From Epithemia pelagica (taxonomy: Eukaryota > Protista > Bacillariophyta), in contig OX337232.1 of assembly GCA_946965045.2 (NCBI GenBank), positions 620,001 through 684,000 of the forward strand: 64,000 bases of DNA. The letters are read 5' to 3'. Positions 61,858 to 64,000 of the stretch are shown piece by piece. A program made the position numbers and the translations under genes. The notes under the pieces were generated by a model. It was not told the DNA's origin. It saw nothing but the letters and a program-made list of their open reading frames with translations, and did no database searches. How positions within the stretch are numbered: position 1 is the stretch's first letter; each line of letters begins with the position of its first letter.

Positions 61858-62149
61858 GCTCCACCACAGGGCCGGATTGACGCAGGCATAATGAAATTGC
61901 CTTAAAAGCTTGTTCCGTCTCGGATTGCACTACAGATAGATTATCAACAAGCTAGCCTTTCGTCCTAGAGAGGTCGCGTCAATGTCCCAAAAGGCTAGGT
62001 CGTTCGTCCAAACATCATCCAAGATTTCGGGGAGGCAACGTGTTCTCGTAGGACAGAATTCAGGTCTCAGCGTATATCTACAACCGATTAAGCGTAAGAA
62101 AGTGCGCCGGTCAGTTGGATGGCACGTGTCTTTAATTAATTTTGGTCCT

Positions 62150-62375
62150 GATGTCGGAAATCTGGTCCCGATCTCGGAATTCGGGTCGATCTCGGAATTC
62201 GGGCCAGATCTCGGAATTCGGGTCGATCTCGGAATTCGGGCCAGATCTCGGAATTCGGGTGTTTACTCTGAAATAAAGTATACTTTTGTCGGAATTCGGG
62301 TCGATCTCGGAATTCGGGCCAGATCTCGGAATTCGGGTCGATCTCGGAATTCGGGCCAGATCTCGGAATTTGGTC
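62150..62375. repeat. Bipartite array of alternating 18/19-bp quasi-palindromic units around an AT-rich core
   Basis: GATCTCGGAATTCGGGTC and GATCTCGGAATTCGGGCCA alternate, about 5 units each side of a 28-nt spacer (62261-62288). Nine GAATTC sites. Confidence 0.9.
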
Positions 62376-62718
62376 TTTCCGTTGAACGGTTTTCAAGTTG
62401 CCGTGCCTGCTCGCAATATCCTGTTTGACAGGTCAACTCGTCTCTCTATTGACTAGATAGCTAGGAGTACTATTAGCCATTATCGAAATTCGGGGTTTTA
62501 GCTATGGAATGGGAACACTATCTACTTCAAGGAATGATTAACTAGGATAGGTTGTGCTATGGCTTTTGTCTGACTTCTCGTCCGGACTCGACAGGTCATA
62601 GCAAATCTCTTGGCAGCCTCTCGTCCGAGACGGAACCAGCTTTTAAGGCAATTTCAATGCAAGGGAGTCCGACCCCATACATCGGGGTGGGTGGTCTATA
62701 CTGGTGGTGGACCAGTTT

Positions 62719-62778
62719 GGGGGGTGGTGCCCTGCAAGGCCCAAACAGGGGGGGATGGTGCCCTGCAAGGCCCAAACA
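62719..62778. repeat. ~30-bp tandem duplication
   Basis: GGGGG(A)TGGTGCCCTGCAAGGCCCAAACA x2. Confidence 0.85.
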
Positions 62779-63067
62779 TGCCACGGATTGCGTCCCGTGA
62801 CGGGGTCAATGGGCGAATGCTGGTCGTCGTCGTTTTCGTCCTTGTCATTCTTGTTGTTACGCTTAATACTAACTATATACCTAGCTATGCAGGTAGTTCG
62901 TCTCACATTTTTATTTTACAGTAGAATTTTATTGTAGAGCCGGGAAGTAGTGATCGTGCGAATCGCGCGACATCATGGGTGAACCGCGAAAGGAACATTA
63001 TGTCCCTGCGACATCCCATCTCATAATAAAACCGGGCGGTAGTCACTACCTACATATCTAGATATAA

Positions 63068-63260
63068 AGTAAGCAGATTACTCCCCTGTGATTTCTCATT
63101 CCTTCCTCGTCGGGCGCCCGGCTTGTCGGGAGAATGACTCGACGGGCATATGTCTTGTCGGGCATGCGCCCTCCTCGAACATATGCCCTTCTCGTAATTC
63201 TACCCTCCGCGCCGGGCGACCCTCCTCTAAAGGAATGAATCACCGTGAAGTAGTCTTACT
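63068..63260 (-). ncRNA. Putative structured RNA element: rod-like hairpin with four periodic 5x5 internal loops
   Basis: Arms are reverse-complementary in blocks separated by regularly spaced symmetric loops (see findings). It lies in the 3' UTR position of the LRR gene. Confidence 0.5.
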
Positions 63261-64000
63261 ACTACCATTCGGATTCCAGGGACACGTCCAATGGGATTGC
63301 TGCTGCACGACAAAGTCCACCAGATTTTGGTCCGTGGGTGGTGGTCGCTCGGGACGAATTGTTGTGGTGGTGGTGGTGGTGGTGGTGGTTTGGTGGACGA
63401 AGCGTTGATACAAAAAGTGCAAGGCCGTACACTGATCCAAGACGTGGGGTCCTTCCAGCAAGACACGACTGCTTTGGGTCGTCAATAAGGACAGGGAATG
63501 ACAGCCTTGCAAGGCTTGTGTGTGCAACGTCACTGATCTGGTGTTGGCTGCTGTTGGTCCATGGTCGGGTAGGACCAAGGACAAGAGGGAGGCACATCCG
63601 GCAAAGGCGGATGGACCAATCACAAACGACGACGACGAGGATGGTGCAGTGTTGTGATTGTTGTGGTTGTTAGTGGTAGTAGTGGTCGTCGATTTTTGGG
63701 ACGACGACGACGACGACAGGTCGATCGTGAGCAAGGCGCGACACTGGGCAAAGGTGGAGGCGGGAATGCCCCCAGTACGACAACACGACGGCCACCCGCG
63801 CACATGGACCAATCGCGTACACCCTTGAAAGAGGCCCGGTCCCACTTCCAATGGTACCGTGGTCGTGGCATCCAGAAAGGAGACCCCGGACAAGCGAGTA
63901 CAGTGTGCAAAGGCCCGCGCTCCCAGGCGTGTCACGGTTGGTGGTAGAATCAAGGGACCCGTGCAGGCGGTGCAATGCACAAAACATTCCTCGCCAATCT
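63240..64000 (-). CDS. BspA-type leucine-rich repeat (LRR_5) protein, 5' end beyond window
   Basis: IGEECFVHCT, LPPTVTRLGARAFAHCTRL, VGPGLFQGCTRL, IPASTFAQCRAL and IGPSAFAGCASL repeats. Confidence 0.85.
   Translation of the reverse strand, partial: IGEECFVHCTACTGPLILPPTVTRLGARAFAHCTRLSGVSFLDATTTVPLEVGPGLFQGCTRLVHVRGWPSCCRTGGIPASTFAQCRALLTIDLSSSSSSQKSTTTTTTNNHNNHNTAPSSSSSFVIGPSAFAGCASLLSLVLPDHGPTAANTRSVTLHTQALQGCHSLSLLTTQSSRVLLEGPHVLDQCTALHFLYQRFVHQTTTTTTTTTTIRPERPPPTDQNLVDFVVQQQSHWTCPWNPNGSSKTTSR

What the first reader, a model, noticed from the sequence alone, without database searches (positions are those of the whole stretch)
63068..63260. Rod-like hairpin with four evenly spaced, sequence-conserved 5x5 purine-rich internal loops, starting at the LRR gene stop codon
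Seen: the minus strand folds as tcattcctt..[GAGGA]gggtcgcccggc[GCGGA]gggtagaattac[GAGAA]gggcatatgttc[GAGGA]gggc-gcat-gccc[GACAA]gacatatgccc[GTCGA]gtcattctccc[GACAA]gccgggcgccc[GACGA]..aaggaatga. The loops keep a consensus of 5'-GNGRA-3' opposite 5'-GWCRA-3', each next to a GGG/CCC clamp, with a 16/17-nt period. The stems between loops differ in sequence yet keep their pairing, so structure rather than sequence appears to be conserved. The fold starts at the TGA of the minus-strand LRR ORF, so it would be in that mRNA's 3' UTR. Established: symmetric loops closed by G.A pairs are typical protein-binding RNA motifs. Inference: a multivalent RNA element (localisation, stability or recoding) or an independent ncRNA that I cannot assign to a known family. 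A simple MITE would be expected to have perfect arms or randomly placed mismatches.
Basis: partly seen in the sequence, partly recalled or inferred. Interest (0 to 1): 0.8.

Follow-up and report, generated by a model that had tools for sequence, protein, structure and literature searches.

The report
Purine-zipped hairpin of Crypton transposon
The hairpin is real, but it is not a signal of the LRR gene: it is the conserved end-piece of a young jumping-gene family (a short non-coding derivative of a tyrosine-recombinase "Crypton"-type transposon) that recently landed inside that gene, and its regular purine-purine mismatches appear to be kept by selection on the transposon itself.

Summary
Observation confirmed: window 63068-63260 folds into a rod with four evenly spaced 5x5 loops. 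Each loop is two tandem purine-purine pairs either side of one G-C pair, and only the minus strand can form them. The 3'UTR reading does not hold. The hairpin is the first half of a 390-bp dispersed repeat (62870-63259). About 150 copies lie in this 60.5-Mb genome, in five subfamilies, and are 0-3% from their consensus. A 90% paralogue without the element shows that it landed inside the LRR coding sequence, so the TGA is supplied by the insert. Three empty sites show insertion after GTA without a regular target duplication. TAGT-like repeats span both junctions, and head-to-tail dimers are common. Across subfamilies the loops and three stems barely change, while stem 3 and the basal stems change on both arms. 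Longer relatives begin with the same hairpin. A complete 4.1-kb relative from a related assembly has the same ends and encodes a tyrosine-recombinase-like protein. When the ends are joined, the rod extends across the junction. Best reading: a non-autonomous Crypton-type element whose purine-zipped rod is its cis-acting site. What the rod does is untested, and no RNA data were available. Earlier agents of this scan reported the same hairpin on other DNA of this genome.

The parts
62870..63259 (-). Whole 390-bp non-autonomous element (subfamily S1a). On the minus strand it begins GTAAGAC and ends ATAGTTA.
   Evidence: Homology with about 25 other copies ends at these points. It is bounded by the empty site in paralogue L065 and is 0.3% from the subfamily consensus.
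63068..63260 (-). Rod hairpin: the most conserved module of the element and the subject of the finding.
   Evidence: Folds; arm-to-arm display; consensus fold over 19 copies of five subfamilies.
63223..63227 (-). Loop 1, 5' side (GAGGA); its partner is 63107-63111 (GACGA).
   Evidence: purine-purine pairs either side of a central G-C.
63206..63210 (-). Loop 2, 5' side (GCGGA); its partner is 63123-63127 (GACAA).
63189..63193 (-). Loop 3, 5' side (GAGAA here, GAGGA in most copies); its partner is 63139-63143 (GTCGA).
63172..63176 (-). Loop 4, 5' side (GAGGA); its partner is 63155-63159 (GACAA).
63164..63167 (-). Apical tetraloop. It is a recurrent breakpoint, and the 4348-bp tandem duplication starts at 63168.
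   Evidence: Window 63168-64000 recurs at 100% identity 4348 bp downstream. Half-hairpins ending at the tip occur in L047, L051 and L054.
63045..63073 (.). Inner 29-nt inverted repeat, directly after the hairpin. It pairs with 62869-62897.
   Evidence: Repeat I1, 83% complementary. In head-to-tail copies it extends the rod across the unit junction.
62869..62897 (.). Outer 29-nt inverted repeat at the far end of the element.
62870..62969 (-). Conserved 3' module (last ~100 nt), shared with subfamily S3 and with the 3' end of the 4.1-kb recombinase-encoding relative.
   Evidence: 82% identity between S1 and S3; alignment A3 with L232.
63260..64000 (-). BspA-type LRR gene (it runs off the window), upstream part of the interrupted ORF.
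   Evidence: PF13306 LRR_5, E 7e-18; ORF list.
63240..63242 (-). TGA that ends the ORF. It lies inside the inserted element.
   Evidence: the last 6 codons (SKTTSR) and the stop come from the insert.
62656..62869 (-). Continuation of the disrupted LRR-gene coding sequence beyond the insert.
   Evidence: Matches paralogue L065 across the insertion point.

Best explanation
The hairpin is the conserved terminal cis-module of a young, active family of tyrosine-recombinase (Crypton-type) transposons. The window copy is a 390-bp non-coding deletion derivative: the first ~220 nt (rod plus a 29-nt repeat) joined to the last ~170 nt of the long element. It inserted very recently, in sense orientation, into the coding sequence of an LRR-gene paralogue. 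That is why an ORF appears to stop at the foot of the fold.

Shown:
- the element is dispersed and young;
- it inserts cleanly after (R)GTA, with TAGT-like short repeats across both junctions and no regular target duplication;
- head-to-tail dimers of mixed variants are common;
- long relatives start with the same rod;
- a complete relative with the same two ends encodes a tyrosine-recombinase-like catalytic domain;
- joining the two ends extends the rod to about 250 nt, with the junction inside one arm;
- across subfamilies the loops and the clamp stems are the most conserved part, while other stems change on both arms.

Inferred: the element is excised as a circle and re-integrated by the recombinase of the long elements at TAGT-like sites. 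The rod, with its G.A/A.G - G:C - G.A/A.G modules, would be the site that the recombinase or its accessory proteins recognise, probably as an extruded single-strand fold. Only the minus strand can stack the purine pairs, and that asymmetry would give the site a polarity.

My odds are about 0.97 that this is a mobile-element module and not a gene-specific RNA signal. They are about 0.75 that the family is moved by a tyrosine recombinase, and about 0.4 for the specific role proposed for the purine loops.
For: Copy number: at least 44 full-length matches at 82-100% identity. A 22-mer from the rod occurs 154 times, and the three-module loop pattern 144 times; both have 0 hits in reversed controls.

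Unit and age: the repeat unit is 375-393 bp, and copies are 0-3% from their subfamily consensus.

Empty sites: paralogue L065 for the window copy; a 99% identical copia copy, L224, against L035; a related-assembly Kelch gene, L231, against L011, which shows a clean insertion.

Flank logo (n=44): G 33, T 38, A 40 before the element and G 41, T 31, A 25 after it.

Dimers: they are mixed combinations of the 375- and 386-bp variants at distinct loci, plus one S3+S1 heterodimer.

Structure conservation: 95.8% of cells are paired against 33-42% when partners are slid. Four pairs show changes on both sides (22 cells; 0 of 500 shuffles reach this). RNAalifold predicts the same structure independently. 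Stem 3 takes four different sequences with pairing kept, and the basal stems are replaced on both arms in S3 and S5. The purine-purine loop pattern holds in nearly all of 49 copies. Core identity between S1 and S3 is about 87%, against 45-62% for the basal stems and the inner part.

Long elements: homology in S2, S4 and S5 starts at the outer end of the rod and runs at least 1.6 kb.

Complete relative: L232:9459-13594 has the same start and end, and its 3' end aligns with the window element.

Recombinase: the ORF L232:12040-12426 and its 65% relative P0123 have PF00589-type clusters, including eukaryotic DUF3504/integrase ones, as nearest clusters (22-25 of 30, score 0.96). In addition, phmmer relatives P0168 and P0138 carry PF00589 exactly on the aligned stretch (E 1.4e-17 and 0.003).

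Joined ends: the DNA fold of a head-to-tail junction gives one rod, z -8.4.

Literature: Cryptons have short terminal direct repeats, no TIRs, a proposed circular intermediate, and occur in a diatom (PMC3212892).
Against: I never saw a recombinase gene inside a copy in this genome. Direct Pfam, PHROGs and PDB sequence searches with that ORF were blank. The single-sequence structure model was unusable, with pLDDT 41. Scans of this genome with PF12012 and PF00589 gave nothing over the cut-off, which is expected if the gene is divergent and split by introns but does not help.

One of the three empty sites shows an extra GTA, so the insert there is unit+3. Many copies lack matching flank triplets, so the exact crossover rule is not settled.

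The layout also resembles Helitron2/HINE ends, and intact Helitron Rep genes exist in this genome.

Nothing here shows circles, protein binding or any phenotype of the loops. Arm-to-arm templated repair could produce some of the two-sided stem changes without selection.
Confidence: 0.72

Rival explanations
1. Non-autonomous rolling-circle (Helitron2/HINE-like) or other HUH single-strand transposon. The imperfect strand-specific hairpin would be the end signal read on single-stranded DNA. Insertion would occur 3' of a short target without duplication, and tandem copies would arise from read-through.
For: On the plus strand the layout is a terminal 29-nt repeat, its inverted copy directly before a 3' palindrome, and variable central repeats. 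This is the layout described for Helitron2 and HINE/DINE-1. There is no TSD in two empty sites. The target is orientation-specific. Head-to-tail arrays and a unit+3 insert occur. About 20 Helitron Rep matches with long open frames exist in the genome.
Against: No sequence similarity to the Helitron ends I could read. No Rep domain lies within about 15 kb of any listed hairpin copy. The long elements that carry the hairpin have other genes, and the complete relative encodes a tyrosine-recombinase-like protein, not RepHel. Dimers are mixed variants, which fits re-integration at a resident end better than read-through. The conserved target lies on the side of the hairpin end, the opposite of the Helitron2 convention.
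Confidence: 0.1
2. Ordinary cut-and-paste foldback element or MITE moved by a DDE transposase, with the periodic 8-mers acting as subterminal transposase-binding sites.
For: Long inverted arms built of 16/17-nt modules resemble foldback-type arms made of sub-repeats (my recollection of FB elements). The element is short, non-coding and present in high copy number.
Against: There is no fixed-length TSD in three empty sites. The two ends of the 390-bp unit are not inverted repeats of each other. Insertion is orientation-specific next to GTA. The 5-mers are in direct, not inverted, orientation on the two arms, so a symmetric binding site is not present. Head-to-tail dimers abut without spacer.
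Confidence: 0.04
3. Intron-generating element (introner-like). In sense orientation the insert starts GTAAG and has TATAG three bases before its end. It could therefore be spliced out, leaving 3 nt in frame, with the rod bringing the splice sites together. This would not exclude the transposon reading.
For: Removal of the element restores long ORFs in four sense-oriented genic copies: the window LRR gene, the L011 Kelch gene (302+174 codons, Kelch_1 on both sides), L008, and the L035 copia RT. No antisense case had long ORFs on both sides. Introners derived from Cryptons and from unknown elements are on record, diatoms included (PMC12130899).
Against: Most copies are not in ORFs and show no sense bias overall. 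The 5' splice-site-like letters are not conserved in S3 and S5 (GTATTA, GTGATA). Copies are so young that intact flanking ORFs prove little. One of the four cases is a retrotransposon gene and one has no recognisable family. The only gene call on record stops at the junction (P0001). There are no RNA data. I searched exons apart and did not search or fold any joined model.
Confidence: 0.12
4. One reading: a host RNA element (3'UTR localisation, stability or recoding signal) or an independent structured ncRNA gene.
For: The fold is more stable on the gene's sense strand, and the tandem G.A motifs are RNA-like. The loops are conserved.
Against: About 150 near-identical copies lie at unrelated places in both orientations. 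The copy interrupts the coding sequence, and the paralogue lacks it. The copy is 0.3% from consensus, so it is very recent. The same gene copy carries a second transposon insertion in its coding sequence. There is no Rfam match.
Confidence: 0.03

Closest known systems
Crypton DNA transposons, in particular CryptonS of oomycetes and a diatom (Kojima and Jurka 2011, PMC3212892)
   Same: Tyrosine-recombinase-like gene in the full-length relative. [quoted passage not shown] Non-autonomous derivatives that keep both ends. The host group is stramenopile/diatom-like.
   Different: Cryptons are described there as lacking structured ends. Here a conserved 190-nt rod starts at the end and grows to about 250 nt when the ends are joined. 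The termini are not the TATGG reported for most CryptonS. The long elements carry extra small ORFs.
Helitron2 and Helentron-associated HINE/DINE-1 elements (PMC3627910, PMC4067079)
   Same: A terminal short repeat whose inverted copy sits just before a 3' palindrome, variable central tandem repeats, no TSD, insertion beside a short preferred sequence, and compensatory changes that keep the terminal structures.
   Different: The palindrome here is about ten times longer and periodic. No Rep/helicase is linked to it. The target is GTA/TAC rather than T-runs. The conserved target lies on the hairpin side.
Foldback-type transposons with arms made of tandem sub-repeats (from my own knowledge, not checked here)
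   Same: Long inverted arms with a short internal period.
   Different: In those, the arms are simple inverted copies. Here a 5-mer per module is in direct orientation on both arms, giving strand-specific purine pairs. The unit also has a non-palindromic half and no TSD.
Hairpin telomeres of parvoviruses with a mismatched purine bubble, and the imperfect sub-terminal hairpins of IS200/IS605 (from my own knowledge; resemblance of principle only)
   Same: Conserved mismatches in a long hairpin make the two arms or strands unequal, and so give polarity to a site-specific DNA enzyme.
   Different: The enzymes (HUH nucleases), replicons and scale are unrelated. No homology is claimed.
Introner elements (PMC12130899)
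   Same: A dispersed near-identical element with GT...AG-like limits, found inside coding sequence in sense orientation in a few genes.
   Different: Splicing is unproven. Most copies are not genic. The splice-site-like ends are not conserved between subfamilies.

Membership tests
Crypton (tyrosine-recombinase DNA transposon) | Autonomous members encode a tyrosine recombinase as their only transposition enzyme | tested here: inconclusive
   The complete 4.1-kb relative in L232 has an ORF with an RTGR..GRH..Y-type stretch. Its nearest feature clusters are PF00589/DUF3504. Its phmmer relatives carry PF00589 on the aligned stretch. However, direct Pfam hits are absent, the gene model is split, and no copy in this genome could be read that far.
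Crypton (tyrosine-recombinase DNA transposon) | No TIRs or LTRs of the unit; short (4-6 bp) direct repeats at both termini | tested here: met
   The unit ends GTAAGAC... and ...AGTTA are not inverted copies. TA|GT spans the left junction in 35 of 44 copies and the right junction in about 31 of 44.
Crypton (tyrosine-recombinase DNA transposon) | Integration without a staggered-cut target duplication | tested here: met
   The L011/L231 pair is clean, and the window/L065 pair is consistent with a clean insertion. L035/L224 has an extra GTA, so there are exceptions of 3 nt.
Crypton (tyrosine-recombinase DNA transposon) | Circular excised intermediate | not testable with these tools
   There is only indirect support: head-to-tail dimers, and a rod that is completed across joined ends.
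MITE / foldback element (DDE cut-and-paste) | Terminal inverted repeats at the two ends of the unit, plus a fixed-length TSD | tested here: not met
Helitron2 / HINE | 5' terminal repeat, with its inverted copy directly upstream of a 3' hairpin; no TSD | tested here: met
   Repeats at 62869-62897 and 63045-63073, followed by the palindrome.
Helitron2 / HINE | Ends shared with an autonomous Rep/helicase element | tested here: not met
   No similarity to the Helitron ends read. No Rep lies near the listed copies. The long relatives carry other genes.
Any Rfam RNA family (including hammerhead/retrozyme, snoRNA, miRNA precursors) | Match to a covariance model at or near the gathering score | tested here: not met
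   The best overlapping hit is snoU49, 17 bits against a gathering score of 35, E 4.
Introner | Copies are removed as spliceosomal introns from host transcripts | not testable with these tools
   No run on record as RNA holds the stretch, and the runs served are contigs. Only ORF continuity could be tested.

The most novel reading that the evidence does not exclude
The purine-zipped rod is a structure-specific recombination site of a eukaryotic tyrosine-recombinase transposon. The joined ends would extrude a ~250-nt fold that only one strand can stabilise through stacked G.A pairs. The recombinase or the element's small accessory proteins would read that fold, through its eight evenly spaced GA(G/C)GA modules, to choose strand, polarity and cutting point. 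This would be a kind of attachment site not described for Cryptons or other eukaryotic DNA transposons.
Probability: 0.3. Interest if true: 0.7.

Novelty: new variant of a known kind. Interest (0 to 1): 0.5.

Why it matters
For the gene, the apparent stop codon and "3'UTR structure" are the scar of a very recent transposon hit, in a gene copy that also carries a second transposon and a tip-of-palindrome duplication. It should be annotated as a disrupted paralogue.

For transposon biology, Cryptons are poorly understood and are described as having no structured ends. A family whose most conserved part is a long, strand-asymmetric, periodically mismatched rod at the joining point offers a concrete, testable cis-element for tyrosine-recombinase transposition in eukaryotes. 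The family is young, abundant and has natural loop variants.

The recurrent breaks and flips at the hairpin tip also make these copies natural markers of palindrome fragility in this genome.

Tried and rejected
- **Rfam** at E up to 10: nothing.
- **TSD hunt:** done by eye and by script over about 44 copies. Apparent 6-10-bp matches in L004, L009 and L015 were not general.
- **"Short form" of the element:** rejected. L003 is split by a nested 2-kb element with a 10-bp TSD. The S2 copies are the ends of long elements.
- **SINE/retroposon reading:** rejected. There is no tail, no variable TSD, and copies form head-to-tail dimers.
- **Helitron link:** I fetched eight Rep loci. There was no similarity to our ends, and the Rep ORF has only PIF1 and Helitron_like_N.
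- **Relatives elsewhere:** Exact conserved words in viral and GTDB genome contigs gave 0 hits.
- **Expression:** no run on record as RNA holds the stretch. The four runs served are contigs of one study. Three of them look like DNA, with about 30-fold extra depth on the element. The fourth is patchy and covers the non-hairpin half but not the hairpin. No conclusion on transcription is possible.
- **PF12012 and PF00589 scans** of the genome: nothing usable.
- **Exact-protein look-ups** of four ORFs of the long elements: not on record.
- **Single-sequence AlphaFold** of the recombinase-like ORF: pLDDT 41. I did not use it for a fold search.
- **Spliced models:** I searched exons separately by reference, and neither built nor searched a joined protein.

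Full report
**1.

It folds into one rod. As RNA, the minus strand gives -107.4 kcal/mol (z -8.8) and the plus strand -91.2 (z -7.1). As DNA the values are -48.0 and -43.2.

Laying the two arms against each other shows a repeated module. The 5' arm reads GAGGA-GGG-T-N8 and the 3' arm reads N8-CCC-GACRA. The middle base of each "loop" forms a G-C pair. The two positions on either side are purine-purine, in G.A/A.G order. One T is bulged per module, which explains the 17/16-nt period.

The 5-mers are therefore in direct, not inverted, orientation on the two arms. All eight lie on the minus strand, and the plus strand has pyrimidine-pyrimidine mismatches instead. No Rfam family matches.

**2. It is a dispersed repeat, and the hairpin is only half of the unit**

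- The genome (60.5 Mb, 23 contigs) holds at least 44 full-length matches at 82-100% identity.
- A 22-mer of the rod occurs 154 times and the three-module pattern 144 times. Reversed controls give 0 for both.
- Homology between copies runs over window 62870-63259, which is 390 bp.
- The unit consists of the rod, a 29-nt segment (63045-63073), a variable middle, and a conserved last ~100 nt. That last part ends with the inverted copy of the 29-mer (62869-62897).
- Copies are 0-3% from their subfamily consensus. The window copy is 0.3% away.
- I distinguish subfamilies S1a/b, S2, S3, S4 and S5.

**3. It sits inside the gene, not behind it**

The ORF is a BspA-type LRR protein (PF13306). A 90% identical paralogue on another contig (L065) lacks the element, and its frame continues through the insertion point for more than 100 codons. 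In the window copy the last six codons (SKTTSR) and the TGA come from the insert. The remainder of the coding sequence follows at 62656-62869.

The same gene copy carries a second transposon in its coding sequence (61893-62655, 3-bp ATT duplication). So the "stop codon plus 3'UTR fold" is an insertion scar.

**4. How it inserts**

Three empty sites could be compared:
- Window against L065: consistent with a clean insertion between GTA and GTA in a short (GTA)n run.
- L011 against an uninterrupted Kelch gene of a related assembly (P0002/L231): exactly the 390 nt were added after ...GGAGTA, with nothing duplicated or lost.
- L035 against a 99% identical copia copy (L224): unit plus an extra GTA.

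Over 44 loci, the flank before the element reads R-G(33)-T(38)-A(40), and the flank after it reads G(41)-T(31)-A(25). TA|GT therefore spans both junctions in most copies. There is no fixed-length duplication, and many copies have unlike triplets on the two sides.

Head-to-tail dimers without spacer are common in S3. They are mixed combinations of a 375-bp and a 386-bp variant at different loci. One locus holds an S3 unit followed by an S1 unit. This fits repeated integration at the end of a resident copy, because that end recreates the preferred site.

**5. What is conserved**

I aligned 19 copies from the five subfamilies and counted pairs on the structure I named.
- 95.8% of cells are paired, against 33-42% when the partners are slid.
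- Four pairs show changes on both sides (22 cells). No shuffle out of 500 reaches the observed covariation.
- RNAalifold predicts the same structure, including the lone G-C pairs in the loops.

All the covariation in the core lies in stem 3. That stem exists as CATATG/CATATG, CACGTG/CACGTG, CAAT.G/CAATTG and AACACG/CGTGTT. The basal stems outside loop 1 are replaced on both arms in S2, S3 and S5. Stems 1, 2 and 4, the clamps and the loops hardly vary.

The purine-purine pattern is present in nearly all of 49 parsed copies. The core is the most conserved part of the element: about 87% identity between S1 and S3, against 45-62% for the basal stems and the inner part.

Single copies do show what unconstrained palindromes do. 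The apical part is flipped in L024. Two loops are made perfectly complementary in L232. Half-hairpins end at the tip in L047, L051 and L054. A 4348-bp tandem duplication starts 2 nt from the centre of symmetry at 63168.

None of the five subfamily consensuses has all its loops zipped; only S2's loop 2 has shifted into a paired register. That argues for selection in the propagating lineages, but templated arm-to-arm repair may explain part of the two-sided stem changes.

**6. Which kind of element**

I first favoured a Helitron-like single-strand mechanism. The layout resembles Helitron2/HINE ends, and the genome has about 20 Rep matches. However, the Helitron ends I could read are unrelated, and no Rep lies near a listed copy.

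Notes of earlier agents of this scan then said that the same G.A-studded hairpin is the end of Crypton elements with TAGT repeats. I tested that lead as far as the tools allowed.
- **(a) Long relatives.** The S2, S4 and S5 hairpins are the first ~200 nt of long elements. Homology between copies starts at the outer end of the rod and runs at least 1.6 kb to the edge of the loci. These elements share small conserved ORFs.
- **(b) A complete relative.** Through a 56% relative of one such ORF (P0121) I fetched 20 kb of a related assembly (L232). It holds a complete 4.1-kb homologue that starts with the rod and ends ...TATGGAGTTA. Its last 110 nt align with the window element.
- **(c) A recombinase-like ORF.** The ORF L232:12040-12426 contains an RTGR...GRH...Y-type stretch. 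Of its 30 nearest named Atlas clusters, 25 are PF00589. For its 65% relative P0123 the figure is 22, including eukaryotic DUF3504/integrase clusters. An exhaustive phmmer search found 65 relatives. Two of ten scanned carry PF00589 on exactly the aligned stretch (P0168, E 1.4e-17; P0138, E 0.003).
- **(d) Joined ends.** The DNA fold of a natural head-to-tail junction gives one ~250-nt rod running across the unit junction. The palindrome is therefore completed when the ends are joined, and the joining point lies inside one arm.

Together with the short terminal repeats and the lack of a TSD, this matches the published description of Cryptons, except for the structured end (PMC3212892).

**7. Limits**

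- Direct family searches of the ORF are blank, and the structure model failed.
- There are no RNA data, so transcription, splicing and small RNAs are open.
- The intron-like ends (GTAAG...TATAG + 3 nt) and four sense-oriented genic copies with ORFs restored on removal are recorded as a side-reading only.
- No relatives were found in the metagenome, viral or prokaryote collections.

**8. Verdict**

The interpretation as a gene-specific RNA element is not. The fold is the cis-module of a young Crypton-type transposon family, and the window holds a non-autonomous copy that has just disrupted an LRR-gene paralogue. The conserved, strand-specific purine zipper at the joining point is unusual for this transposon class and worth an experiment. 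The same feature has already been reported by this scan on other DNA of this genome.

Noticed in passing
window 63168-64000 and G000:C5:687516-688348 (L064:1501-2333): A 4348-bp tandem duplication of the LRR-gene region begins 2 nt from the centre of the palindrome. The second copy keeps only the arm next to the gene, at 100% identity. This points to breakage at the hairpin tip.
   Followed up: yes
window 61893-62655: A second transposon lies in the same coding sequence: 763 bp, terminal inverted repeats starting GAAATTGCCTTAAAAGC, and a 3-bp ATT duplication (61890-61892 and 62656-62658). It is absent from paralogue L065 and splits a TPLH|YAC motif. Depth in the DNA runs suggests it is multi-copy.
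   Followed up: partly
L065 (G000:C6:698329-702075): An uninterrupted 87-90% paralogue of the LRR gene. It serves as the empty site for both insertions.
   Followed up: yes
L041:2073-4107 (G000:C5, inside copy L003): A nested ~2-kb element with ~87-nt inverted ends and a 10-bp target duplication splits one copy between the hairpin and the rest. It looks Mutator-like and has no long ORF.
   Followed up: partly
L024:1501-1693; L232:9459-9660; L047, L051, L054: Variant copies: the apical part of the hairpin is inverted (L024); loops 2 and 3 are converted to perfect complements (L232); half-hairpins are truncated exactly at the tip (L047, L051, L054); L073:1811-1935 is an S3/S5 recombinant.
   Followed up: partly
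L074:1942-2562, L069:1882-2489, L026:500-1230: The long elements share two small conserved ORFs. One has a VIDLV + serine/acid run + FEDDNMWNW motif, which looks like a SUMO-interaction motif. The other is basic and has a (D/E)KEN motif. Their function is unknown.
   Followed up: no
L011:594-2414 (G000:C10:3392910-3396102): A Kelch-repeat gene is interrupted in sense orientation by an S1b copy. Both halves are still open (302 + 174 codons). The related assembly has the intact 412-aa gene (P0002). The junction creates TA|G TAA stops if it is not spliced.
   Followed up: partly
L055:2198, L056:2191, L057:2810 (5' ends); L061:4779, L062:4993 (3' ends): Helitron copies with long Rep/PIF1 ORFs. The 5' terminal sequence (TTCGACTGAGTTCA...) recurs inverted just before a small 3' hairpin, which is the Helitron2-type layout. 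They are unrelated to the finding.
   Followed up: partly
window 62719-62778: A 29-31-bp direct repeat (two copies, 97% alike) lies within the downstream part of the disrupted coding sequence.
   Followed up: no
window 62844-63095 versus 63096-63263 in run X4: One run of unknown kind covers the non-hairpin half of the element (contig depth 110-300) but essentially none of the hairpin. This could be an assembly effect on palindromes or a real difference. It cannot be interpreted from contigs.
   Followed up: no
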